This document shows, in pieces, positions 5,152-39,913 of a stretch of 64,000 nucleotides of DNA. This DNA is from Iphione sp. A-MEVVRFRX5. Taxonomy: Eukaryota. Both the position numbers and the translations under genes were made by a program. The notes under the pieces were generated by a model. That model ran no database searches, had not been told where the DNA came from, and was given only the letters and a program-made list of their open reading frames with translations. Position 1 is the first letter of the stretch, and each line of letters begins with the position of its first letter. Location: contig OZ320316.1 of assembly GCA_976226885.1 (NCBI GenBank), positions 101,928,001-101,992,000 of the forward strand. The letters are read 5' to 3'.

Positions 5152-6218
5152 ACGGTCACGGAGGTCGGGTGGAGTTCGACAAGCAGGGCGACGGCCTGGG
5201 CCGCTACTACATTCTCAACTACCGGCGCAACCGCACCACGCGCCGCTTCGAGTACGTGCGCGTCGGGCGCTGGTCGTCGTCGGGGCTCACCATGTTCGAC
5301 GATCAACGCGTCGTGTGGACGGGCGGCACCTACGACGTGCCGGACAGTCGCTGTTCTCAGCCGTGCGGGCCGGACGAGATCAAGAAGGGCCAGCAGGGGG
5401 ACACCTGCTGCTGGATCTGCACCAAGTGCCGCCCGTACGAGTACGTCCGCGACGAGTTCACCTGCGAGGACTGCGGCGACGGTTACTGGCCGCATGCGCA
5501 CAAGCGCTCCTGCTACAAGCTTCCGGAGAAGTACATCCGCTGGAACAGCGTCTTCGCCATCGTGCCCATCTGCCTGAGCGTGCTGGGCATCCTCCTGACC
5601 TGTATAGTCATCCTGACCTTCCTGCGTCACTGGGACACCCCCATAGTGAAAGCCTCCGGCCGCGAACTTAGCTTCCTGCTGCTGGCCGGTTTCCTCGTGT
5701 GCTACTCCATGTCGTTCATCCTTATCATCAAGCCCTCGGCGCTCGTCTGCGGCGTGCAGCGCTTCGGGGTCGGCTTCGGCTTCAGCATGACGTACGCCTC
5801 GCTGCTCACCAAGACCAACCGCATCTCGCGCATCTTCGACAGCGCCAGCAAGTCGGCCAAGCGCCCGGCCTTCATCAGCCCCAAGTCGCAGCTGCTCATC
5901 AGCGCCATCTTGATCGGCTTCCAGGTGGTGTTCGCCTGCGTGTGGATGGTGCTCGAGCCGCCGGCCACCCGCCATTACTACCTGGGCGGCCAGCGTGACC
6001 AGGTGATCCTCAAGTGTCGCATCAAGGACATCTCCTTCTTGGTGTCGCTCATCTACAACATGCTGCTCATCGTCGTGTGCACGGTGTACGCTGTCAAGAC
6101 GAGGAAGATCCCCGAGAACTTCAACGAGTCCAAGTTCATCGGCTTTACCATGTACACCACCTGTATCATCTGGCTGGCCTTCGTGCCCATCTACTTCGGC
6201 ACGCTCAACTCCTTCGAG
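5152..6218 (+). CDS. mGluR: Metabotropic glutamate receptor (group II / DmGluRA-like), internal exon: end of Venus-flytrap domain, cysteine-rich domain, TM1-TM6
   Basis: Acceptor ...ccacccctcag|AC at 5151/5152 and donor TTCGAG|gtaagt at 6218/6219. Translation has FDKQGDGLGRY, a 9-Cys CRD (CSQPC...CCWICTKC...C..C...C), KASGRELS, LLTKTNRISRIF and KTRKIPENFNESKFIGFTMYTTCIIWLAFVPIYFG. Codons are strongly G/C-ending. Upstream exons are outside the window. Confidence 0.97.
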
Positions 6219-6560
6219 GTAAGTATCTTAACCTTGAATTGACCTTATCCCGGGGTCAAAGAGCTTCACTATGTTTGCTACTTGTATTGCCTGTCTCACC
6301 TTTGTGTTGATCTTAGACATGCTCAACTCCTTCGAGGTAAGAACCCTGACCTTGAGATGACCTTATCCTGGGTCAAGCAGCTTCACTAGGTTTGCTACTT
6401 GTAAATGCCTGTCTCCCCTTTGTGTTGATCTAAGACATGTTTAACTCCTTCGAGGTGGGGAACCTGACCTTGAGATGACCCTGTCCTGTTCACTTTAACA
6501 TTGCCTGTGTGACCTTTAGGTTGATCTCAGACTTGGCTAACTCTTTTCAGGTAAAGTTTG
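6203..6560 (+). repeat. 118-bp tandem repeat whose unit contains the mGluR exon end and 5' splice site (4 copies)
   Basis: aactccttcgag|gt with the GT at 6219, 6337 and 6455, plus a diverged aactcttttcag|gtaaag with the GT at 6551. Confidence 0.9.
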
Positions 6561-27921: not shown

Positions 27922-29240
27922 TCACACTCCCCACTATGTTTTTTCTAGACACCACGATTAAAATCAGGGGAGGGTTATAATATAGAGGACGTTGCTGATA
28001 ATTTGATTTTATTACCCTTATCATTAATTGTCTCTTTCCCTACATGAAGATGTTGATCATCGTGACAGGGTCTCGTGTACCAAGGCATCATAATCTAGGA
28101 CAGATCGCAGTGATGTAATCGCTGTTAATAAGGCATGCGAAAACAAAACAAGTTGGTATACGAAAGTTTGCAAAATTGTTTTTAAATAAAAGAAAACATA
28201 GTGCAATATTCACATTGTATTTGTCTTTTATTGAGCAGTGCATTATACAGTCGATTCTCACTTAGGAGACCACGTCTTGAACTGGAGATATTGGGTATCT
28301 GCTGAGGTCTGGTCTCCCTTGTGATCTGGTCTTCCAAGCGAGAATCGACTGAATTTCTTAATTTAGCCTTATTTTTCTCCTAGTATTAGTTATTTTTTCA
28401 TAATATCTAGCCAGAGCAAAACTGTTCAGATCATTTCTTAAATATAACAAACGAGGTAGGTTAGCGAGATCACATTGGTTTACTTCCTTAAGTCCATTCT
28501 GGAGAGCAAAAGAAACCTTATTGAAGCTAACGCTGACTAAAAAACATGAAAAAGACTGGTCAAGCGAAACCATAAACGGACATCTTGGAAAAGACAATTA
28601 AAAAGAAATCTGATTGCATCTGAAAAGTTTTATTTTGATTCGTCATAAGAACGTAGGGTCACATTCACGCCTTCAGAAAGCTGGAAATGAATTGAAAGTT
28701 AAAGTTTCAGAGTACATGTATTGTTTTTGACTTGCATTTTTCGGGTGTGCACGTTTTCTATATTTTGAACAGTCGATTATACCGTATATATTGTTAATGG
28801 TTGACGTAGACAAAATTCCTCTCCTTTTTTTCATTATTATTATGTACATTTATTCGTACATTATGCGTGTAGTTAGGGTCAATCCTAACTCAACTGATGT
28901 ATCGACAGATAGTTAAAAACAACAGGGGGAAAACACTGCTTTTAATCTGGGTGGCCAACACCTCGGTGATGGGTGCATAGGTGAGATAGTCTGATCATTG
29001 AAGGTACCAATCCAATACGTCAAATCCGCCAATTGAAGGAAGGGACCGTACGTACTGCCTTAATATTTTGGTACATCATTACAAGGAACCAATAAACAAT
29101 TTTCGCACATAAATCAAAAGGAAGCAATATATATAAGTACATATGTATATGATTGGGTAGTTACAGGAATAAGCGGATAAGGAACGTGAAAGGCATCGAG
29201 TGAAACTAATGTGGATGTAGGTTTATGTGTATGTAAATAT

Positions 29241-29478
29241 TGTTCGCCCCGAACGAAGAGACATGACAACTAGGTTACTTTTGAAGGTTTATTCTCGAAG
29301 AACAGAAGGTGAATGACGACAGGACTCCGCCCGGTTCTAATTTATACACATAACGTAACTCCGGGCGGAGCCCCTCACGATACCGGACATAACTCCGGTG
29401 ACACATCACTCCCTAGCGGAGTAACCCCGGGCGGAGCCCAACACTCCCTAGCGGAGTAACCCCGGGCGGAGCCCAACA
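29241..29478 (-). repeat. 3' LTR (238 bp)
   Basis: Direct repeat of 38183-38420 (231/238 identical). On the - strand: TATAAA (plus tttata 29341-29346), AATAAA, and a 35-bp tandem duplication at the U3 end. Confidence 0.97.
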
Positions 29479-29489
29479 CTGCCCCCCTC
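29479..29489 (-). promoter_or_regulatory. Polypurine tract
   Basis: The - strand reads GAGGGGGGCAG immediately before the 3' LTR TGTT. Confidence 0.85.
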
Positions 29490-29587
29490 GAACAAAGAGC
29501 TCAGTCCCTGAGCAACCATGCGTAACCGAACATGCAAAACAGCAACTATAACAGTCAGCAACAAGATAAATCAACCCGGGGGAACCT

Positions 29588-32506
29588 CTACTGGTCCCCT
29601 GATGATCTCTCTACTGAGACCTTAAACTCTTCCTCCAGAGACAGGTCTAATTGGTCTGTCTCCGGTACGTTGGCAGTCAGTTCTGAGTGCACCAATGTCG
29701 GATGCACCCGGGGCTCCTTCCGCCCGTGCATTTGGAGCCACTCTGTCGGAGACTTTGCCCTGGATGGGTCTGGGGTGCGGAGCCGAAGCTGCACCCCCTG
29801 CCGGATCCGCACTAGGGTGTTGCTAGTCTGGGGAGTAACTGTTGCTATCCCGCGCGCAGAGAGTAAAGGCCACCCCTCAGGAGGAACGGAGAGGGGTGTA
29901 ACGACCCGAGCCTGGGCCCAACGCACAACCGGCCCCAGCACCTCGGCCACCTCCAATCTCAGCTGGCGACAAGCCACAGGCCTAGTGTTGGTCCGCCTGG
30001 CTACGTCCCCAGCGGACCCTGGTGCTGTCCCCGGGCGGGAGGGCCCGACCGAGGCCGGAGTGCTGGTAGCCAGTGGTGGAACTGTCTGGTCTCTACGCAT
30101 GAGTCCTGCTACTACCCCGGGGCGTCGTTCCACCAAGACAGAGTGGGTGGCACGTCCCAGGCGTCCCAGGAGTGCTGGGGAGAGGATCCCTCGGCTCGCT
30201 GAGGTAGCGGGCTGTACTCCCTCTCGCCGTCCCGGGAGTGCCGGGGGGAGGACCTCCTGGAGCCTTGGAGGAGGGGCCGGTTGCTCCCCCTCCTCCTCGC
30301 GTCATCCCGGGAGTGCCGGGGGGAGGACCTCCTGGTCCACTGGGGGACAGACTGGCCGCTCACTCTCCTCGTCGTGTCGTCCCGGGGGTGCTGGGGGGGG
30401 GGGACCTCCTGGTCCTTGGGAGGAGGGGCCGGTTGCTCCCCCTCCTCCTCGCGTCGTCCCGGGAGTGCCGGGGGGAGGACCTCCTGGTCCACTGGGGGAG
30501 GGACTGGCTGCTCACTCTCCTCGTCGCGTCGTCCCGGGGGTGCCGGGGGGAGGACCTCCTGGTCCTTGGGAGGAGGGGCCGGTTGCTCCCCCTCCTCCTC
30601 GCATCGTCCCGGGAGTGCTGGGGGGAGGACCTCCTGGTCCGCCGGGGGAGAGACTTGCTGCTCCCCCCCCTCCTTGCGTTGTCCCGGGGGTACCGGGGGG
30701 AGGACCTCCTGGTCCATCGGAAGTCGGGTGGTCGCTCTCCCTCCTCCTCGTGTCGTCCCGGGGGTGCCGGGGGGAGGACCTCCTGGTCTGTTAGGGGAAG
30801 GGTTGGCGGTCCTCCCTTCCCCTCCTGCTGGCTAGGGAGGGTGCCGGACGCTGTCGCCCTTACTGGAGTACTGGAGCTGGTGACGAGTGAGGGCGGTACC
30901 TCACCCTGCTGGCCGCAAGACTCTGGCGAAACTCCGCCTTCACCGGAGTCCGCTGATTCACTCCGCCCCGCCTGTAGATCACCGGAGTCCGGTCGCCGCT
31001 CCGTCTCAAAGGAGGAGGGACCCCAGCCGAGCTCCGCCAAGGTAACCGCCGTCTCCTCCTCAGTGGGCAAGTCTTCTTCTGACTCCTCGGCGATAGCTCC
31101 CCCCGTGAGCTCCAGCCGAGCATAACGCACCCGGCCACACGTGCTTCCCGGGCTCTGACTCAGCTCGGTGGCCAGGGTGCTCGAGGCGACTGTCTCATCC
31201 TGTCCCTGACTTGCCTCCTCATCAGAGTCCGGATCGGACCCTATGATCACGACGTGTGGGGCTGCTCCGACCGCTCGACGTTTTCCCAACCTTCTCCCAG
31301 GCGCTCATCCAATTCCCTCGCTGCTGCACTGTACGAGGAGGACCCCGCGGAGCCGGGAGTAGACTGAGGAGTGAACCCTTGGCCCTTGATGCCAGATGTG
31401 ACCAGGGCCCTCTGCAGTGGAGACATGGTGGATGACGCGGCGCCCTTCTTCGCCGGGGAGGGCAGGCTAGCTGGGGTAATCGGACTGGTCTGCGGCTGGT
31501 ACTTCCTCTTTTCTCGAGCCTCCTCCCTCATGGCGGCCAGATTCCAGCCACGTCCGGGAGTGATCGGGTCTTCTTCTTCTGGGGGGGACCTCGGCCTGGC
31601 CCGCCCTCTGGCCAGCACTCGAACTCGCGCTGCTCCGGGGGTGGAAGGAAGGGCGGGTGCAGGGGACCTCGCGGAGGTAGAGGGAGACCACCCCTGCGAT
31701 CGGATCCCGCGCCCGACTCCTCGCAGAGGTACGCCCGGAGACATATCCAGCCCGTAGAGTTGTGCCTCGATGGAAGCCGTGGACACCGGTGTGACAGGGG
31801 TCCTCGACCCCCCAGGCGTGGACACCGTGGAAGAAACTTGGGCGCCCCTCCCCGTCTGAGGCCGAAGTTGGCGGGGCTCCACCACTTCTTTGCACTCTCC
31901 CTCACTGGTGGAAGAGACTGAGACTGAGACTTGGGCACCCCTCCCCGTCCGGGGCCGGAGTTGGCGGGGCTCCACCACCTCCTCTTGTTCCTCTTCTCCC
32001 CCTTCTTCCGCCTGTTCCTCTTCTCCCTCTGCCTCTTCCCCTTCATCTTTGTCCTCGTCCTCCCAGTCCTTGTCCAACGAGACCTCAGCAGCAGCTGACG
32101 CAGCCGGGGGAGGGCGCCGGCCTAGCTTCGGGCGGGACGGCGGAGCTTCCCCCCGACACATGGCCAGTTCCTTAGCCCTCTCGTAGGCCTCGGCCTTCAT
32201 CTGGCGCTGGTACTCCACTTCCTTCTCGGGTGGCACGGGGATGATCTCTTTCCTGGTGAGGTCCATATACACCACATCCACGAACTGGCCCAGTTCCAGA
32301 GGGCGCTCGGCCTCCTTGTCATGCTGTTTCTCAAGGTGCCGCCGGAAATCGTCCCAGCGGCCAAAATCTGCCCCCCGGCAGCGGGGAACCGGGCAGATCC
32401 GGACAAATCCTCTCCTCGCATGCCTCTTCTTATGGCGTTTAAAGTTGGAGGGGTGGTCCGTGGTGTAACCACAGGTCTGACAGAGACGGACCTTGTTCCT
32501 TGGCAT
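29588..32506 (-). pseudogene. Accessory ORF3 of the Gypsy element: about 970-aa C2H2 zinc-finger protein (3 frameshifts, 1 in-frame stop)
   Basis: First ATG at 32506 (MPRNKVRL). CQTC-x12-H-x3-H and CPVPRC-x13-H-x4-H at 32482-32321. Frames join across indels near 31290, 30740 and 30400 and a TGA at 30304-30302. Ends at stop 29588-29590, about 100 nt before the PPT. Confidence 0.85.
30235..30790 (-). repeat. 75-bp coding tandem repeat x8 (25-aa DQEVLPPA(P/L)PGRxxEEGEQPxPPP) inside ORF3
   Basis: gacctcc at 30251, 30326, 30403, 30478, 30553, 30628, 30703 and 30777. Confidence 0.95.
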
Positions 32507-32754
32507 TTCGTCCTCCACCCGGGCAACGAGGCAAACTCCGGCAGCTTGAGTGAACTCCGGTGGCGGAGTGGTAGACTCCGGTGACCCAAGTGAGTTCTGA
32601 AAAGAACTCCCAACGTACTCCGGTGGCAGAGCGATGCGGCCTCGGCCGTCGGGCGGTGGACAATCTGGCACGTACTCCGGTGGGGCCCAGCAAAAACTCC
32701 GAAGTCGGGGCAGAGCTCGGCGGTGAACAGTACGAATGGCCTCCTGCAGGGCCA

Positions 32755-32930
32755 CCTCCTTATATCTGCGCGCCCAGGACTCCGCCGGTCTCTGATTGGC
32801 CCAGCATTCCCGCGCTTCGCACTGATTGGTCGATGTCGAGCGGAGTGCGGTAATTCGCCCGCCCGGAGTCTGTTGTAGGACTCCGCTGACTTCGTGGGGA
32901 CTCCGGGCGGAGCTTAGGGCGAACTCCGGC
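32755..32930 (-). promoter_or_regulatory. Putative internal Pol II promoter upstream of ORF3
   Basis: In - strand order: GC-rich GCGGAG sites (32912-32840), CCAAT (32829-32825), CCAAT (32799-32795), TATAAG (32764-32759). No ATG until 32506. Confidence 0.65.
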
Positions 32931-35900
32931 CGCTACACGCTTCTTCCAAGTCGGGTGCCGCCTCTCTCCTATCTTCCTCCACAGCACCTGCACCAAGTGG
33001 TCAGTGGCACGACGCCCATACTGGCGCTGTAACCTCCTCCGCAGGCCCAGCAATTTCTTCATGGCCCAGTAGAACCTGAGGGCTGGGCCGACCCACTCTC
33101 TCCCGGTGACCAATGGCTGACAAACAGAGAGGGGTTGGAGGGCGCGGCAGGTCCGGTCACTCAGGATGCGAAGCTCGGCAGCGACCAGATCTACCCACCC
33201 CTGAGGAATCCGGACGACCGGCGGGGGGCGCGGTACAGAGGGTGGAGGTCTGGAGCTCTGTCCCTGGACCCGTCTGTACCAGCGAGGGGGGGGCACCGGA
33301 GGTTGAACCCGACCTCCTTCCAGGCCCCGGTGGTCCGGCTCATGCCGTAGCATCCTGACTCGTCCCAGCACCTCTTCTTGCTCTCCCACCATCGGGTCCA
33401 CGGCTCGCTTTAAGAGGTCTGCGTTTACTACCCGGCGGCGCTGTCCCCGTTTAATCCGGTAGACCACGGCGCTTAGTCTCGATTGGACCTCCCACGGACC
33501 TTGCCAACGGCTTTGCAGTTTGGGGGACCGCCCCTTCTTCTTGATAGGACTGTAGAGCCACACCCGGTCTCAGACATCGAACTCCTGGGGCCTGACCTTC
33601 TTATCGTACCAATCCTTCTGACGTTCAGCGGCTCTCTGTAAGTGCCACCACACGGCCCGGTGGGCCTCCACGAAGCGACGGTGGACCTCCTCCACGTACC
33701 CGGCTACCGATCGCCGCTCTTCCTTCGGGGACCCCACCATCAACTCGATGGGCAGAGTAGTCTCTCGTTGCAGGGTAAGCCAGTTTGGGGAGAACCCTGT
33801 CGTACGATGTGGTGTGGCTCGGTAGGCGGCAAGGACGTACGGAACCTTCTCATCCCAGTCAGACTGGTCTACACGCACCACTTTGGCCAGCATGCTGAGA
33901 AGAGTCCTATCAAACCTCTCCACTACCCCGTCGCTCTGAGGGTGGTTGGGGGTAGTTCGCGACCGTTGAATCCCGAGAAGTTGTAGCAGCTCCTGCACGA
34001 CCGCCGCCTCGAAATTCCTTCCTTGATCCGAATGGAGGACCCGCGGAGGCCCGAACTGGCAGATAACTTCCCGTAGTAAAATCTCAGCGGTGGCTGTCGC
34101 AGTTACCTCCTTCGCCGGGAAGGCTTCGGTCCACTTGGTGAAATGGTCGGCCACCACCAGGATGTACTTGTTCCCCCTGACCGTCTCGGGGAACGGGCCG
34201 CACACGTCCATGGCGACGAACTCCCAGGGGGCGGGGGCTACTCACAGCTGCAAGGGGGCCCGATGCCGCCGGGAAGGGTCCTGCCTCTGCTGGCAAGGGA
34301 GGCATGCCCGCCCCCACTGCTGGACGTCACGTGCCAGCCCAGGCCAGCAATATTTGCGTCGTAGAGCCCCTTCGGTCTTTTCGGGGCCAAGGTGCCCCCC
34401 CATGACTCCGGCGTGGACCTCCTGCCAAACGTGGAAGCGACGTCCCTCGGGTACATAGGCTTGATACCAGGTGGTTCCGTCTTCGCCTTCCCACCGGCGG
34501 CAAAGGAGACCTCCCCTCATCTCCAGCCGGGGCGCTTCTCCCTTCAGCCAACGCTCCTCTCGTCCATCTCCGCTGCTCGGCGGGGGAATTGCCTCCCCCA
34601 ACTCGAGAGCCCGCAGCACAGGCCCTGCCCTGTCGTCTTACTTCTGGGCATAACTCAGAGTGTCCTCTTCGACTGGCTCCACGGACACCGCCGCTACCTG
34701 CCCCATCTCGTCCAGCTCCGTCGGCTCCCTCCCGCACTGTGGGCATATCTGCCTCGAGAGGCCGTCCGCGTTACCATGCTTCTTACCCGGTCGGTGGATG
34801 ATCTCCAGGTCGTAGCAGTGTACCTCTTCTAGCCAGCGTGCGAACTGGCCTTCCGGGGCTCTGAAGTGGCACAACCAGCACAGTGAACTATGGTCTGTAC
34901 AGACCACTAGCTTCAGGCCCCCCACATACGAGCGGAACTTGCGGAGACCAAACACGACCGCCAATAATTCCTTCCGGGTCACGCAGTAGTTCCGCTCCGG
35001 GCATGTGAGACTCCGGCTTGCATAGGTCAACACTCGCTCCCTTCCGTCTTGCTCCTGTGAGAGTACCGCTCCTATGCCGGCAGCGGAAGCGTCCGTGTCC
35101 AATGTCATCGGTCCTTCCGGTCGGGGATAGGCCAACACCGGAGAGGAGACCAGCCTTGCCTTCAAAGTGACAAAAGCCTGCTGACAGTCAGGGGTCCAAC
35201 GGTACTCCTTGCCTTTCTCCAGCAGTTCGTGCAGGGGAGCGGCCACCGCGGCGAACCCCTCCACAAAGCTGCGGTAGTAAGAGCAGAGGCCGACGAAGCT
35301 CCGAAGTTCGGTAATGCAACGGGGGACCAGCCAGGCTTGCACAGATGCGATCTTCTCCGGATCCGGCTCCACTCCATCGGCCGACACTTGATGTCCCAGG
35401 TACGCCACCCTCTTCTGAAACAGCTGGCACTTCCGGGGTTTCACCTTAAGGCCTGCCATCCGAAGCCTGCTGAACACCTCGTCCAGGCGCCGGGTCATCT
35501 CCTCCACGGTTCTGCCGATCACGATCACGTCATCCAAGTAGACCAGGCAGGACTGGCCAACCAGTCCTCACAGCACGGCTTCCATCAGACGCTCAAAGGT
35601 AGAAGGCGCGTTACACAACCCGAAGGGCATGACGCGGAATTGGTAGAGTCCCCTGGGCATGCACACGGCCGTCTTTCCCTTATCCTCGGGCCGCACTCCC
35701 ACCTGCCAGTATCCGCTGGCCGGATAGATTGCCGAGAAATAACGTCCCCCTTGCAGAGCGTCCAACGTCTGGTCGATGCGGGGTAGGGGATAGGCGTCCT
35801 TCTTGGTCACCCCGTTCAGCGCCCGGTAGTCTATGCAGAACCTCCAACTCTGATCCTTCTTGCGCACCAATACCACTGGCGACGCCCAGGGACTCGTTGA

Positions 35901-37061
35901 GGGTTCCAGCACTCCTTGCCACAACATCTTGTCCACTTCTTGCTGGACCAGAGCCTTCTTGGCCGGCGGTAGGCGTCGGACCCTCTGCCAAATCGGTCCG
36001 TGACCCTGCGTGTCTATCCGATGTTGGACTACCTCTGTCCGACCCAGCGCTCCTCCCTCCTCCTGGAAGCAGTCCGCGTTCTTCCGTAGCATCCGCTCTA
36101 CCTCTTCCCTCTGCGACTCATCTAGTTCCTTGGGCAATTGCTCCAACAGACCTTGCAGCGCGGACCCGGGCCCGGGCTCTCTACCGGCTCGGGCACTCTC
36201 CTCCTGCTCCAGTCTGTCCGCCCCGTCGACCAGCTGGACTCTCGCGACGACTGTCCCTTGCCACAAGCAATGTCCCCGAGCACTCACGTTGGCAATCTCT
36301 ACCGCTCCCTCTCGGCTACCAGCTGGGCACACCGTGCGTGCCAGCACCATACCTGAGCGGCCCTCCCACTCGGGGGAGGCCTCCACCAACACTGGTTGAT
36401 CCTCATCATCGAGCCCTTCCCAGCGCACGCGGGCCTGTACCGCGCTCCGCCCACTGAGCTGATAATCCTCAACCAGTACAGCCCGACATCCTTCCGTGCT
36501 GTCGTCCTTGGGGACACGCACCCGAAGTGCGGTCCCCTCCGTGTCCACCTGCGCTCTCCAGCAGCATAGCATGTCCAACCCCAGTATCGCGGGGCAATCA
36601 ATTCGGGCCACCCAGGCCTTGACTTCGAGCTCCACTCCAGCGAACTGTACCCGTACTCGGGTCCGGCCCCTCACCCGGAGAGGCTGCCCATCCGCACACA
36701 GGATCCGCCCCGCGGCAGGCTCCAGTTCAGCCAGAGCCAGGGCGTCGGCTACCTCCTCTGAAAGCAATGTGAGGGAGGCTCCCGTATCCACCAACCAGGG
36801 CACCCGGAGCCCGGCCACTTCGCTGGGGAGCACAATGTTCATCCCTCGGTTTTGCTCCCCTTCTAGAACCACTTCCTCCCCCGCCTCCAGGTGCAGCTTC
36901 CGCAGGTGCTCGTCCAGCGTGTCCTCACCATCATCACGCCTCTCCTCGGCCGTCACCCCTACTGTGGGGGGATGGCCGCTCCCCCGTTTCCCAACGGCTG
37001 TTCCTTGGGGGGATGGGGACAATTCCACTTGAAGTGTCCCAACTCGCCACAATTGAAGCAC
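32760..37061 (-). pseudogene. pol: Gypsy pol (protease, RT, RNase H, integrase); single frame with 4 premature stops
   Basis: LVDTGAS (PR), WRFCIDYRALN / MPFGLCNAPSTF / YLDD (RT), LDTDAS (RH), H-x6-H...C-x2-C, MDVCGP / HSDQGRNFE / VERF (IN DDE), WQGPW (GPY/F). In-frame stops at 35570-35568, 34640-34638, 34244-34242 and 33572-33570. Confidence 0.96.
36940..36992 (-). promoter_or_regulatory. -1 programmed ribosomal frameshift signal (gag-pol)
   Basis: G GGA AAC heptamer in the gag frame (plus 36986-36992). A 7-nt spacer precedes a CGGCC...GGCCG stem with an inner CCCC/GGGG. pol is in the -1 frame. Confidence 0.8.
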
Positions 37062-38134
37062 TTTTTACTCGCCGGTCGCCGGTTTTCCTTGTTAGCTTCG
37101 GTCTGCCCTGCTAGTAGCTGTTGCAGCAGCTGCTCTAAGCGTTCCCACCCGCCAGACAGAACCTCTTTCTTCGGGGCCGTAGTAGAGGGAGCGGGCGCTT
37201 GCCCCAGGGCCTCCAACTTGTGTACTTTCTTGGGACTCCCCCTATCCATCTTATTCTGGTAGTACGATTCCGCGACTTGCGAGGCCGAAAGCGCTTCACG
37301 GAAGGTGGATATCCGGGCTTGGGTCACCCACTTCCGGACCTTCTCGTTAGAGAGGGCTCCCACGTAGTACTCCCGGCACATCCGATCTTTCCACTTCCCC
37401 TTCGCCTCCGGGTAAGCCAGCTGGATCAGACGCTTGATCTCGTCGGCCAGGTCCGCCAGTGCTTCGGACTTCTCCTGTCGCCGCCCCTTTAACTGCTGGA
37501 TGTAAGCATCCGTCTGATGCTTGGACTGGAAGCGTTCGGTGAGGGCATTTACCAACTGTTGGTACGCCCCTGCTTGTTCCACATCCACGCCAGTGCTTCG
37601 CAGAACCGCTCGTGCCGACTTCCGAAGTGTGATTCCTAGCTGGAGGGCCTTGTCAGCCTCCGTACAGTGATTGGCGAGTGCCACTAACTCGAAGTGCTGA
37701 AGGAAATGTCGGAGCGGAGTGCTACCATCGTAGGTGTCTGGTTTCACCTGGCCCTTCCTGCCGCCTTCAGGCCATAGCGCGGAGCGAAGTCCTTCCACAA
37801 ATCCGGTCCACAAGGGGGGCGGAGTGGCCGTCTCCGCCTCTCCCTCCTCAGCACCTCCTTCGAGGTGTAGGTCATTACCTCCTACGCCTTCGTCGACCGG
37901 GGCGTGGGGAGCAGAGCCTTGGGCCGGTGTTGGCCCCTCTTCCTCCTCTTCTGGCTCGACTCCCCTTCCTGGTGGGGCATCTTCACTCTCTGGGGAGCAA
38001 CTGTCCTCTTCTCCTGACAGTTCATGAGCCCCGGCAGACTCCGGGCGGAGCTGGGCGGAGTCCGGCCAGACCACGGCGAACTCCGCCCCTTCACCGGATT
38101 CCCCTGGTTCAGCTACCTCCGCCCGGATCTTCAT
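36959..38134 (-). CDS. gag: Gypsy gag (capsid-like domain and CCHC knuckle), frame open
   Basis: VKPDTYDGSTPLRHFLQHFELVA capsid motif and CFNCGELGHFKWNC knuckle. ATG at 38134 after the PBS; the frame is open back to an ATG at 38206 inside the LTR. Confidence 0.92.
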   Translation of the reverse strand: MKIRAEVAEPGESGEGAEFAVVWPDSAQLRPESAGAHELSGEEDSCSPESEDAPPGRGVEPEEEEEGPTPAQGSAPHAPVDEGVGGNDLHLEGGAEEGEAETATPPPLWTGFVEGLRSALWPEGGRKGQVKPDTYDGSTPLRHFLQHFELVALANHCTEADKALQLGITLRKSARAVLRSTGVDVEQAGAYQQLVNALTERFQSKHQTDAYIQQLKGRRQEKSEALADLADEIKRLIQLAYPEAKGKWKDRMCREYYVGALSNEKVRKWVTQARISTFREALSASQVAESYYQNKMDRGSPKKVHKLEALGQAPAPSTTAPKKEVLSGGWERLEQLLQQLLAGQTEANKENRRPASKKCFNCGELGHFKWNCPHPPKEQPLGNGGAAIPPQ

Positions 38135-38162
38135 CGACTCCGCCGAGCTCCCTGGAGGGAAG

Positions 38163-38180
38163 ATCCCACTGCTGCCACCA
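38163..38180 (-). promoter_or_regulatory. Primer-binding site, tRNA-Leu type
   Basis: The - strand reads TGGTGGCAGCAGTGGGAT, 2 nt after the 5' LTR. It is complementary to a ...ATCCCAC(C/T)GCTGCCACCA tRNA-Leu 3' end (from recall, not searched). Confidence 0.8.
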
Positions 38181-38182
38181 AT

Positions 38183-38420
38183 TGTTCGCCCCGAACGAAG
38201 AGACATGACAACTAGGTTACTTTTGAAGGTTTATTCTCGAAGAATATAAGGTGAATGACGACAGGACTCCGCCCGGTTCTAATTTATACACATAACGTAA
38301 CTCCGGACGGAGCCCCCCACGATACCGGACATAACTCCGGCAACACAACACTCCCTAGCGGAGTAACCCCGGGCGGAGCCCAACACTCCCTAGCGGAGTA
38401 ACCCCGGGCGGAGCCCAACA
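38183..38420 (-). repeat. 5' LTR (238 bp)
   Basis: Direct repeat of 29241-29478, followed by PBS and gag on the - strand. Confidence 0.97.
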
Positions 38421-38577
38421 ATATATTAATCTATCAATTTTTTTGGAAAAAAATACCTTAAACATTATGAAAACCATACGTCAAAAAACAAAGGTCTCTC
38501 TGTCTGTCTGTCTGCCTATTTCTCTCTATTCTTCTCTCTTACTCTCTCTTCCCCCTCTCTCTCCCTGGTTCTCTTTC

Positions 38578-39759: not shown

Positions 39760-39913
39760 NNNNNNNNNNNNNNNNNNNNNNNNNNNNNNNNNNNNNNNNN
39801 NNNNNNNNNNNNNNNNNNNNNNNNNNNNNNNNNNNNNNNNNNNNNNNNNNNNNNNNNNNNNNNNNNNNNNNNNNNNNNNNNNNNNNNNNNNNNNNNNNNN
39901 NNNNNNNNNNNNN
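39760..39913. other. Assembly gap (154 N)
   Basis: Run of N. Confidence 1.

What the first reader, a model, noticed from the sequence alone, without database searches (positions are those of the whole stretch)
32321..32482. The element's zinc fingers are predicted to read GCGGAN, and GCGGAG is clustered in its own LTRs, leader and internal promoter
Seen: helix residues (-1,+2,+3,+6) are H,S,N,R in finger 1 and R,D,D,R in finger 2. Known code: R-x-D-D-x-x-R reads GCG (as in Zif268-type RSD[E/D]L.R); N+3/R+6 reads GA-N (His at -1 is ambiguous). Antiparallel binding gives 5'-GCG GAN-3'. Seen: GCGGAG/CTCCGC occurs 6 times in the 238-bp 3' LTR (29325, 29365, 29416, 29431, 29451, 29466; four lie in the 35-bp duplication). 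It occurs 5 times in the first about 100 bp after the PBS (38045, 38055, 38081, 38117, 38138) and 5 times around the internal promoter (32563, 32780, 32840, 32881, 32907). The overlapping hexamer ACTCCG/CGGAGT occurs 13 times in 32535-32928. The dyad CTCCGGGCGGAG recurs at 29359, 32901 and 38039. Several sites (TAGCGGAGT, GAGCGGAGT) are not Sp/KLF GC boxes. Inference: the element encodes its own sequence-specific regulator, forming an autoregulatory loop (activator or copy-number repressor).
Basis: partly seen in the sequence, partly recalled or inferred. Interest (0 to 1): 0.92.

Follow-up and report, generated by a model that had tools for sequence, protein, structure and literature searches.

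The report
Retrotransposon zinc-finger gene matching its promoter motif
A dead Ty3/Gypsy retrotransposon in an invertebrate genome carries an extra gene with a Tramtrack-like two-finger DNA-binding domain, and the short DNA word that those fingers are predicted to read is the most over-represented word in the element's own promoters, which suggests (but does not prove) that the element makes its own transcription factor.

Summary
Every quoted position, count and helix residue was reproduced. GCGGAG and CGGAGT are far above chance in the LTR, in the 160 bp after the primer-binding site, and in a CCAAT-CCAAT-TATA region just upstream of ORF3.

Refinements:
- The recurring word is S-CGGAG-T: 28 CGGAG copies against about 4 expected.
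- GCGGAG accounts for 15 of the 28 sites.
- A 14-bp near-palindrome, made of two abutting hexamers, occurs once in each zone.

The fingers are real. They are coding-like, fold as two beta-beta-alpha units, and their best sequence and structure match in the PDB is the Tramtrack two-finger/DNA complex. Finger 1 has the same contact residues as Tramtrack, whose published site has an AGGA core. The published recognition code gives GCG-GAG. ORF3 also has an acidic stretch after the fingers.

Four of five informative distant relatives also carry a C2H2 ORF between pol and the 3' LTR, so this is a lineage feature. No close relatives could be found, so the co-variation test could not be run, and there is no binding or expression evidence.

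Verdict: the autoregulatory reading is plausible (about 0.4) and partly supported. Host-factor sites remain a serious rival. This copy is dead: pol has four premature stops.

The parts
32321..32482 (-). Two C2H2 zinc fingers of ORF3. Finger 1 helix is H-P-S-N-F-K-R; finger 2 helix is R-W-D-D-F-R-R.
   Evidence: Translation. Pfam sub-threshold hits to both fingers. AlphaFold2 with alignment A3: pLDDT 76.8, two beta-hairpin/helix units. Top PDB fold match 2DRP, the Tramtrack-DNA complex.
31247..32506 (-). ORF3, 419 codons plus stop, no internal stop. Order: N-terminal fingers, a predicted long helix, an acidic stretch (residues about 145-178), then a Ser/Pro/Gly-rich tail.
   Evidence: The first 122 codons show the same GC1/2/3 and codon-usage signature as gag-pol, whereas the stretch 32507-32755 upstream of the ATG does not.
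32507..32935 (-). Promoter-like region and putative 5' UTR of ORF3, with 14 CGGAG sites (13 of them CGGAGT). It overlaps the last codons of pol.
32792..32829 (-). Two CCAATCAG boxes, at 32822-32829 and 32792-32799.
   Evidence: only 6 copies in the whole 64 kb window, two of them here, 30 bp apart.
32760..32766 (-). TATA-like box (GATATAA) about 30 bp downstream of the second CCAAT box. It overlaps the pol stop codon.
   Evidence: Sequence read; pol ORF end.
38183..38420 (-). 5' LTR, 238 bp, TG...CA ends. U3 holds two 35-bp tandem units and 8 CGGAG sites, followed by a TATA-like box and an AATAAA.
29241..29478 (-). 3' LTR. It differs from the 5' LTR at 7 of 238 positions. It is preceded by a purine-rich tract and followed by the 4-bp target-site duplication ATAT (29237-29240; the other copy is at 38421-38424).
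38039..38146 (-). Cluster of six CGGAG sites after the putative primer-binding site. It is either leader or gag N-terminus, because the gag frame is open from an ATG inside the LTR.
38038..38051 (-). 14-bp near-palindrome GCTCCGCCCGGAGT, two abutting hexamers in inverted orientation; post-PBS copy.
   Evidence: 3 exact copies and 5 one-mismatch copies, all on the element's sense strand; 0.02 expected.
32900..32913 (-). The same 14-mer, copy in the internal promoter-like region. It lies inside a 33-nt module shared with the post-PBS cluster.
   Evidence: (alignment score 45 against a null of 18.7, sd 2.4).
29358..29371 (-). The same 14-mer, 3' LTR copy. The 5' LTR copy at 38300-38313 has one substitution.
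36959..38206 (-). gag (Ty3-type capsid, CCHC knuckle), no internal stop.
32760..37061 (-). pol (protease, reverse transcriptase, RNase H, integrase) in one reading frame. It is broken by four premature in-frame stop codons; no frameshift was detected.
   Evidence: Pfam on the separate ORF pieces; count only.
30147..30852 (.). About 8-9 tandem copies of a 75-nt unit between ORF3 and the 3' LTR, open in several frames.

Best explanation
The 9.2-kb element at 29241-38420 (minus strand) is a Ty3/Gypsy LTR retrotransposon with an accessory gene, ORF3. ORF3 makes a small nuclear-type regulator: a Tramtrack-type two-finger C2H2 DNA-binding domain followed by an acidic stretch.

The proposed mechanism has three inferred steps.
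1. ORF3 is transcribed from a CCAAT-CCAAT-TATA promoter at the end of pol. A spliced subgenomic RNA is the alternative.
2. Its fingers bind the 6-7 bp word S-CGGAG-T. Finger 2 reads (G/C)CG and finger 1 reads GAG. The protein may bind as a dimer on the 14-bp near-palindrome.
3. Because the word is concentrated in U3 of the LTR, just after the primer-binding site, and around ORF3's own promoter, the protein feeds back on both promoters. The acidic stretch favours activation over repression, in the manner of the foamy-virus Tas / internal-promoter loop.

Shown: the anatomy, the enrichment, and the kinship and fold of the fingers. Inferred: expression, binding, and the sign of the effect. This particular copy cannot replicate, because pol has four premature stops.
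For: **Element anatomy:**

**Fingers are a DNA-binding type**
- Best PDB sequence hit spanning both fingers is the Tramtrack domain 2DRP.
- Best Foldseek hit for the pLDDT-77 model is the 2DRP DNA complex, probability 0.99.
- 44% identity over 62 residues, E 2e-13, to the two-finger end of a crustacean BTB-zinc-finger protein (names).

**Specificity**
- Finger 1 has the same -1, +2, +3, +4 and +6 residues as Tramtrack finger 1 (alignment).
- Ttk69 binds a TCCT element with consensus GGTCCTGC, i.e. an AGGA core (PMC2651784; PMC5861416).
- The code review PMC12264921 gives Arg/Lys/His to G, Asn to A, Asp/Glu to C, and an Arg(-1)/Asp(+2) pair stabilising G. That yields GCG-GAG.

**Motif**
- GCGGAG ranks 2nd and the overlapping CGGAGT ranks 1st among hexamers enriched in the three zones.
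- No dinucleotide shuffle reaches the observed counts.
- Sites lie on both strands.
- Only 8 of 28 carry the GGG prefix of the GC-box-like subset.
- The 14-mer of two abutting hexamers occurs once per zone against 0.02 expected.
- Modules are shared between zones.

**ORF3 as a gene**
- Coding signature in the first 122 codons, none upstream of the ATG.
- Acidic stretch after the fingers.
- CCAAT x2 and a TATA-like box upstream.
- C2H2 ORFs in the same position in 4 of 5 informative distant relatives.
- In the sea-cucumber relative L006, finger 2 also has R/D/R at -1/+3/+6, and its LTR repeats carry GCGGA 22 times against about 3 expected.
Against: - 11 of 28 sites start with C, which Arg+6 of finger 2 should not prefer.
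- Tramtrack's identical finger 1 is associated with a pyrimidine, not G, after GGA (GGTCCTGC).
- Finger 2 has 13 rather than 12 residues between Cys and His and the linker is non-canonical, so code predictions are less reliable. Both fingers score below Pfam's gathering scores.
- A 6-bp site gives little specificity, and no dimerisation domain was shown.
- The finger ORFs of relatives L002, L003 and L007 have helices that do not look base-reading or do not match their LTR words, and their LTRs lack CGGAG.
- The L006 enrichment comes from one tandemly repeated 85-bp unit, so it is not independent evidence.
- No ORF3 homologue exists in 1.8 billion representative proteins, so selection on ORF3 could not be measured.
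Confidence: 0.4

Rival explanations
1. The CGGAG-type words are binding sites for host transcription factors, which the element uses as LTR enhancers, leader elements and an internal promoter. ORF3 has some other role.
For: Repeated host-factor sites in U3 and the leader are the rule for LTR elements. From my own knowledge, the leader of Drosophila gypsy carries a dozen sites for the host zinc-finger protein Su(Hw). The site class with C before the core (11 of 28) fits finger 2 poorly. Each distant relative has its own different repeated LTR word, whatever its fingers look like.
Against: The GC-box-like subset covers under a third of the sites. This reading leaves unexplained why the code-predicted hexamer of the element's own fingers ranks second of all hexamers, and why the same word surrounds ORF3's own promoter.
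Confidence: 0.3
2. The finger module was captured from a host Tramtrack-type BTB-zinc-finger gene. ORF3 has no BTB domain, so it acts as a mimic or competitor at sites that a host factor of the same specificity also binds, for example by displacing a host repressor from the LTR.
For: The closest relatives of the module are the two-finger ends of arthropod BTB-zinc-finger proteins (44% identity; names; BTB regions visible in alignment A3). Tramtrack is the top PDB match. Pfam finds no BTB domain in ORF3.
Against: The specificity positions of finger 2 (+3 and +6) differ from the Tramtrack type, so the site would differ from that of the nearest known host factors. No host paralogue with the same helices was found.
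Confidence: 0.12
3. ORF3's fingers do something other than read the element's promoters, such as RNA or protein binding, or tethering the integration complex to target DNA. On this reading the match to the LTR word is a coincidence.
For: The fingers of relatives L002 and L007 have acidic or small residues at the contact positions, which suggests the conserved feature is the fold rather than base reading. From my own knowledge, site-specific non-LTR elements such as R2 use N-terminal C2H2 fingers for target recognition.
Against: The window's fingers carry Arg/Asn/Asp/His at every canonical contact position and match a DNA-bound structure. The insertion site (ATAT duplication, AT-rich flanks) holds no CGGAG word. 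The chance that one of the four code-predicted hexamers ranks in the top two of 2080 is about 0.4%, by simple count.
Confidence: 0.1
4. ORF3 is not a functional gene in this copy or family. It is an open frame in GC-rich DNA with a decaying finger remnant, and the motif clusters are merely duplicated sequence modules.
For: GC-rich DNA here is open in many frames on both strands. Coding signal in ORF3 after residue 122 is weak. The copy is dead. Part of the enrichment comes from internal duplications: the 35-bp LTR units and the 33-nt shared module.
Against: All eight zinc ligands and the hydrophobic core positions are intact. The first 122 codons have the gag-pol codon signature in the right frame only. 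The model folds as two fingers. The feature recurs in four distant relatives.
Confidence: 0.08

Closest known systems
Foamy-virus (spumaretrovirus) Tas transactivator with its internal promoter
   Same: In both, an accessory gene lies 3' of the replication genes and is preceded by its own internal promoter. The proposed target sites sit in both that promoter and the LTR U3, which gives a feedback loop. Papers state that Tas is expressed mainly from the internal promoter and activates both it and the LTR (PMC13220597), and that the bovine Tas binds both promoters (PMC4929722).
   Different: There is no sequence relationship. Pfam and the protein searches return no Tas/Bel-type hit. The DNA-binding domain here is a C2H2 pair. 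The element is a Ty3/Gypsy retrotransposon of an invertebrate without env. Binding and activation are not shown here.
Tramtrack (Ttk69) two-finger DNA-binding domain, PDB 2DRP, and arthropod ttk-type BTB-zinc-finger proteins
   Same: It is the best sequence and fold match in the PDB. Both have a two-finger architecture with a long non-canonical linker. The finger 1 contact residues (H, S, N, F, R) are identical. Finger 2 shares R at -1 and D at +2. Identity to a krill BTB-zinc-finger protein is 44%.
   Different: ORF3 has no BTB domain. Finger 2 has D and R at +3 and +6 where the Tramtrack type has N and A/T, which predicts GCG in place of the A-rich triplet. Finger 2 also has C-X4-C and 13-residue spacing.
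Host zinc-finger sites in retrotransposon leaders (Su(Hw) sites of Drosophila gypsy)
   Same: Many copies of one short word lie just downstream of the 5' LTR of a Ty3/Gypsy element and are read by a C2H2 protein (my own knowledge, not tested here).
   Different: There the protein is a host gene with twelve fingers. Here the candidate reader is encoded by the element itself, and the word is also in U3 and at an internal promoter.
Ty1 p22 copy-number-control factor
   Same: It is an element-encoded regulator made from an internal promoter, giving dose-dependent feedback (my own knowledge).
   Different: p22 is a truncated Gag that poisons particle assembly. It is not a DNA-binding protein, and the element is Ty1/Copia.

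Membership tests
Ty3/Gypsy (Metaviridae) LTR retrotransposon | Direct LTRs with TG...CA ends flanked by a short target-site duplication | tested here: met
   238-bp LTRs, 231 of 238 positions identical, TG...CA ends, 4-bp ATAT duplication.
Ty3/Gypsy (Metaviridae) LTR retrotransposon | gag with capsid and CCHC knuckle; pol in the order protease, RT, RNase H, integrase | tested here: met
   Pfam on the separate ORFs: zf-CCHC and Ty3_capsid (weak); Asp_protease_2 and RVT_1; RT_RNaseH_2; rve; Integrase_p58_C, in that order.
Classical DNA-binding C2H2 zinc finger | C-X2-4-C-X12-H-X3-5-H ligand spacing with conserved hydrophobic core | tested here: inconclusive
   Finger 1 fits exactly. Finger 2 has 13 residues between Cys and His. 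Both fingers hit zf-C2H2 models only below gathering scores.
Classical DNA-binding C2H2 zinc finger | Beta-beta-alpha fold | tested here: met
   AlphaFold2 with a 14-row alignment: mean pLDDT 76.8, a hairpin and a helix for each finger. All top Foldseek hits are C2H2-DNA complexes.
Classical DNA-binding C2H2 zinc finger | Canonical 5-residue TGEKP-type linker (7 residues from His to Cys) | tested here: not met
   Eight residues, A-R-R-G-F-V-R-I, separate the last His of finger 1 from the first Cys of finger 2. The Tramtrack alignment also shows a long linker.
ttk-type BTB-zinc-finger transcription factors | C-terminal pair of fingers of the Tramtrack type | tested here: met
ttk-type BTB-zinc-finger transcription factors | N-terminal BTB/POZ dimerisation domain | tested here: not met
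   No BTB hit in ORF3 at E up to 0.1. The fingers begin at residue 9 of the ORF.
Retroviral transactivator plus internal promoter circuit (foamy-virus Tas type) | Accessory ORF 3' of pol with its own promoter | tested here: inconclusive
   The position is met. The promoter is inferred only from two CCAAT boxes and a TATA-like box. There are no transcript data, and a possible splice acceptor lies upstream of the ATG.
Retroviral transactivator plus internal promoter circuit (foamy-virus Tas type) | The protein binds sites in both the LTR and the internal promoter | not testable with these tools
   Only the shared over-represented word and the code prediction are available.
Retroviral transactivator plus internal promoter circuit (foamy-virus Tas type) | Sequence homology to Tas/Bel1 | tested here: not met
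   No such family or protein appears among the Pfam, PDB or protein-search hits.

The most novel reading that the evidence does not exclude
A clade of Ty3/Gypsy retrotransposons of marine and other invertebrates carries its own sequence-specific C2H2 transcription factor, with a Tramtrack-type module probably captured from a host BTB-zinc-finger gene. The factor drives or throttles the element through cognate sites in the LTR and in an internal promoter, and its finger helices and LTR words co-evolve family by family. This would be a retrotransposon counterpart of the foamy-virus Tas circuit.
Probability: 0.25. Interest if true: 0.8.

Novelty: new variant of a known kind. Interest (0 to 1): 0.6.

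Why it matters
LTR retrotransposons are generally thought to depend on host transcription factors. Self-encoded sequence-specific transactivators are a hallmark of complex retroviruses.

A Ty3/Gypsy lineage with its own C2H2 factor and matching sites in two promoters would show that such circuits arose independently in simple retroelements. It would also provide a natural system in which a DNA-binding domain and its sites co-evolve on one small molecule. And it would add a new source of lineage-specific zinc-finger genes and binding-site clusters to invertebrate genomes.

Four full-text searches found no description of a C2H2 ORF 3' of pol in Ty3/Gypsy elements.

Tried and rejected
- **ORF3 homologues: none found.** The exhaustive HMMER search with the first 122 residues gave only generic multi-finger proteins and LRR proteins. 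The LRR hits to residues 67-94 were rejected as repeat-like chance matches. The word-indexed search with the whole ORF3 found nothing, the metagenome scan found nothing, and exact look-ups of ORF3 and gag found nothing.
- **Single-sequence AlphaFold2** of 122 residues was too poor to use (pLDDT 52). It was replaced by the 66-residue model with an alignment.
- **Genomic context of N-terminal-finger proteins** P0037 and P0028: the contigs were too short to be informative.
- **L009**, the closest relative at DNA level (RT about 65% nucleotide identity), lacks a detectable LTR pair, and its 3' part is replaced by another element. It says nothing about ORF3.
- **Host.** My first guess, a vertebrate with a vomeronasal-type receptor, was rejected. 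The exon at 5169-6242 is a metabotropic glutamate receptor closest to invertebrate sequences.
- **RNA-level motif** (packaging or dimerisation) was rejected as the main reading. Sites lie on both strands (11 of 28 antisense) and in U3.
- **Rfam:** no match in the window.
- **Co-variation among distant relatives** was attempted. It was judged uninformative, apart from the suggestive but non-independent case of L006.
Full report
**What is there**

The window has about 42% G+C, except for a 9.2-kb block of 60-68% G+C. That block is bounded by two 238-bp direct repeats at 29241-29478 and 38183-38420. They are identical at 231 of 238 positions, have TG...CA ends, and are flanked by a 4-bp ATAT duplication.

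On the minus strand the block encodes:
- gag, with a Ty3-type capsid and a CCHC knuckle;
- pol, in the order protease, reverse transcriptase, RNase H, integrase.

It is therefore a Ty3/Gypsy LTR retrotransposon. All of pol lies in one frame but carries four premature in-frame stop codons. No frameshift was seen. gag and ORF3 have no internal stops. This copy is dead.

The host is an invertebrate. An exon at 5169-6242 encodes a metabotropic glutamate receptor whose best named relatives are annelid, mollusc and arthropod proteins (64-65% identity). An unnamed ENA assembly holds a 90%-identical orthologue. No other copy of the element is in the window.

**Check of the observation**

*Fingers.* ORF3 starts at the ATG at 32506 and ends at 31247 (419 codons). 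Finger 2 is C-X4-C-X13-H-X4-H, one residue longer than canonical. The linker is eight non-canonical residues. Pfam detects both fingers only below its gathering scores.

*Motif positions.* Every motif position in the finding was reproduced.

*Chance.* No dinucleotide-preserving shuffle of any of the three regions reached the observed counts, while gag-pol coding DNA is at expectation. An unbiased ranking of all k-mers in LTR + post-PBS + internal region against the rest of the element puts CGGAG first among 5-mers, CGGAGT first and GCGGAG second among 6-mers, and GCGGA third among 5-mers. The other three GCGGAN hexamers are absent.

*Site anatomy.* Of the 28 CGGAG sites, the preceding base is G in 15 and C in 11, and the following base is T in 22. 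Eleven are antisense to the element. The recurring word is best written S-CGGAG-T.

*Near-palindrome and shared modules.* A 14-bp near-palindrome, two abutting hexamers in inverted orientation, occurs exactly once in each zone. Five further one-mismatch copies all lie on the element's sense strand, against 0.02 expected. The post-PBS cluster and the internal region share a 33-nt module. The LTR and the internal region share a 24-nt one.

**Is ORF3 a gene, and what kind of fingers are these?**

- *Coding signal.* The first 122 codons of ORF3 show the same low GC2 / high GC3 pattern and codon preference as gag-pol, in the right frame only. The open stretch upstream of the ATG (32507-32755) does not. 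That supports the ATG at 32506 as the start and a non-coding region upstream of it.
- *Promoter-like region.* That upstream region holds two CCAATCAG boxes 30 bp apart (two of only six in the 64-kb window). A TATA-like box follows about 30 bp further on and overlaps the pol stop codon.
- *Rest of the protein.* After the fingers come a predicted long helix, a stretch with 23 acidic residues in about 34, and a Ser/Pro/Gly-rich tail.
- *Nearest solved relative.* The best PDB sequence match spanning both fingers is the Tramtrack two-finger domain (2DRP, E 0.019). With a 14-sequence alignment, AlphaFold2 gives two beta-beta-alpha units at mean pLDDT 76.8. Foldseek again ranks the 2DRP DNA complex first, with probability 0.99.
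- *Nearest full proteins.* The closest full-length relatives are crustacean BTB-zinc-finger proteins: 44% identity over 62 residues, E 2e-13. ORF3 has no BTB domain.

**Specificity**

In the alignment, finger 1 of ORF3 and finger 1 of Tramtrack share the residues at -1, +2, +3, +4 and +6. Ttk69 is reported to bind a TCCT element with consensus GGTCCTGC, which is an AGGA core on the other strand (PMC2651784; PMC5861416).

A recent review of the code assigns the 5', middle and 3' bases of a triplet to +6, +3 and -1. It gives Arg/Lys/His to G, Asn/Gln to A and Asp/Glu to C, and describes the Arg(-1)/Asp(+2) pair that stabilises a G contact (PMC12264921).

Applied here, finger 2 reads GCG and finger 1 reads GAG.

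Two positions do not fit cleanly:
- the first base is C in 11 of 28 sites;
- the base after GGA is G here, but a pyrimidine in the published Ttk69 consensus.

**Relatives**

No ORF3 homologue exists in the protein collections or the metagenome scan. The nearest pol proteins are only about 40-48% identical over protease-RT.

I fetched six such loci. The table summarises what lies between pol and the 3' LTR, and whether the LTR is enriched for CGGAG.

| Locus | Source | C2H2 ORF between pol and 3' LTR | CGGAG in LTR |
|---|---|---|---|
| L002 | Same ENA sample as the mGluR orthologue | Yes, opens with finger(s) | No enrichment |
| L003 | ENA assembly ERZ25070167 | Yes, opens with a finger | No enrichment |
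| L006 | Holothuria leucospilota | Yes, two fingers | See below |
| L007 | ENA assembly ERZ25073814 | Yes, finger(s) | No enrichment |
| L008 | ENA assembly ERZ26858540 | None | One CGGAG in the LTR |
| L009 | Same ENA sample as L002 | Uninformative; 3' part missing | Not assessable |

Sources.

A finger-bearing ORF3 is therefore a feature of a clade, not an accident of this copy. L002 also has tandem repeats after its ORF3, as the window's element does at 30147-30852.

The LTRs of L002, L003 and L007 each have their own repeated words instead of CGGAG. Their finger helices are either single, degenerate or not obviously base-reading.

In L006, finger 2 has R/D/R at -1/+3/+6 (GCG by the code). 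Its LTR carries GCGGA 22 times against about 3 expected. These all lie in six copies of one 85-bp unit, so this is suggestive but not independent.

**Weighing**

*For the autoregulatory reading*
- The fingers are of a proven DNA-binding type, with polar or charged residues at every contact position.
- An a-priori textbook reading lands on the second most enriched hexamer out of 2080 possible hexamers (strands collapsed), which overlaps the first.
- The sites lie on both strands and in U3.
- The 14-mer has the geometry expected for two 6-bp readers.
- The same word surrounds ORF3's own promoter-like region.
- An acidic stretch follows the fingers.

*Against it*
- The imperfect fit at two positions.
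- The non-canonical finger 2 and linker.
- The low information content of a two-finger site.
- The post-hoc nature of the match.
- The silence of the distant relatives.
- The complete absence of binding or expression data.

I put the probability that ORF3 protein binds these words and feeds back on the element at about 0.4. Activation is somewhat more likely than repression because of the acidic stretch. The main rival is host-factor sites with an unrelated ORF3 function, at about 0.3. A hybrid, in which ORF3 is a captured Tramtrack-type domain competing with a host factor of like specificity, is at about 0.1.

**Comparison with what is known**

The circuit would work like the foamy-virus Tas / internal-promoter loop (PMC13220597, PMC4929722). 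It is not a member of that family: there is no homology, the DNA-binding fold is different, the element is a Ty3/Gypsy retrotransposon, and it has no env. The DNA-binding module is homologous to the Tramtrack type, but the protein is not a BTB-zinc-finger factor.

Four full-text searches found no description of a C2H2 ORF 3' of pol in Ty3/Gypsy elements. I file it as a new variant of a known kind.

- The N runs at 39760-39913 and 62713-62868 were left untouched.

Noticed in passing
window 5169-6242 (+): A long exon encodes the cysteine-rich and 7-TM parts of a metabotropic glutamate receptor. The best named relatives are invertebrate (annelid, mollusc, arthropod, 64-65%). A 90%-identical orthologue lies in ENA assembly ERZ25767047. 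The host is therefore an invertebrate, not a vertebrate.
   Followed up: partly
L002 15710-16345; L003 14719-15183; L006 14395-14829; L007 14156-14386: Distant Ty3/Gypsy relatives (protease-RT 38-48% identical) from a sea cucumber and from unnamed ENA assemblies each have an ORF between pol and the 3' LTR that opens with one or two C2H2 fingers. L008 has none. This accessory gene seems undescribed in the literature I could search.
   Followed up: partly
L006 8147-8656 (and the 3' LTR copy): The LTR of the Holothuria relative holds six tandem 85-bp units, each with several TGCGG(A/C) words on both strands. Finger 2 of its ORF3 has R/D/R at -1/+3/+6. This is a possible second case of finger/LTR-word correspondence, but all sites derive from one duplicated unit.
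   Followed up: partly
window 38135-38206: The gag frame is open from an ATG inside the 5' LTR and runs through the putative primer-binding site. The 'leader' motif cluster may therefore be gag N-terminal coding sequence (weak in-frame codon signal). L003 likewise has its gag ATG inside the LTR.
   Followed up: partly
window 32597-32606 (-): A pyrimidine-rich run ending in CAG lies about 90 nt upstream of the ORF3 ATG and looks like a splice acceptor. ORF3 could be expressed from a spliced subgenomic RNA instead of, or as well as, from the internal promoter.
   Followed up: no
window 30147-30852 and 30360-31289 (-): About 8-9 tandem 75-nt repeats lie between ORF3 and the 3' LTR and are open in several frames. 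A 309-codon Arg/Ser-rich ORF overlaps the end of ORF3 in another frame, so ORF3 may once have been longer. L002 also has tandem repeats (21-nt units) after its ORF3.
   Followed up: no
window 32760-33389 (-): pol continues for about 200 codons beyond the conserved integrase C-terminal domain, with little coding signal. The promoter-like region of ORF3 overlaps its end, and the TATA-like box overlaps the pol stop codon.
   Followed up: partly
window 32224-32307 (-), ORF3 residues 67-94: This stretch gives weak HMMER matches to single leucine-rich repeats of large bacterial and amphioxus LRR proteins. I judged these chance resemblance to the LRR pattern.
   Followed up: partly
window 31833-31981: A 56-nt direct repeat (89% identical, 93 nt apart) inside ORF3 encodes a duplicated peptide segment after the acidic stretch.
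   Followed up: no
L002 782-1600 and L009 5452-5850: Long 9-nt microsatellite-like arrays lie in the flanks of two relatives from the same assembly. Translated, they mimic Cys/His patterns. They are unrelated to the finding but can trap pattern searches for zinc fingers.
   Followed up: no
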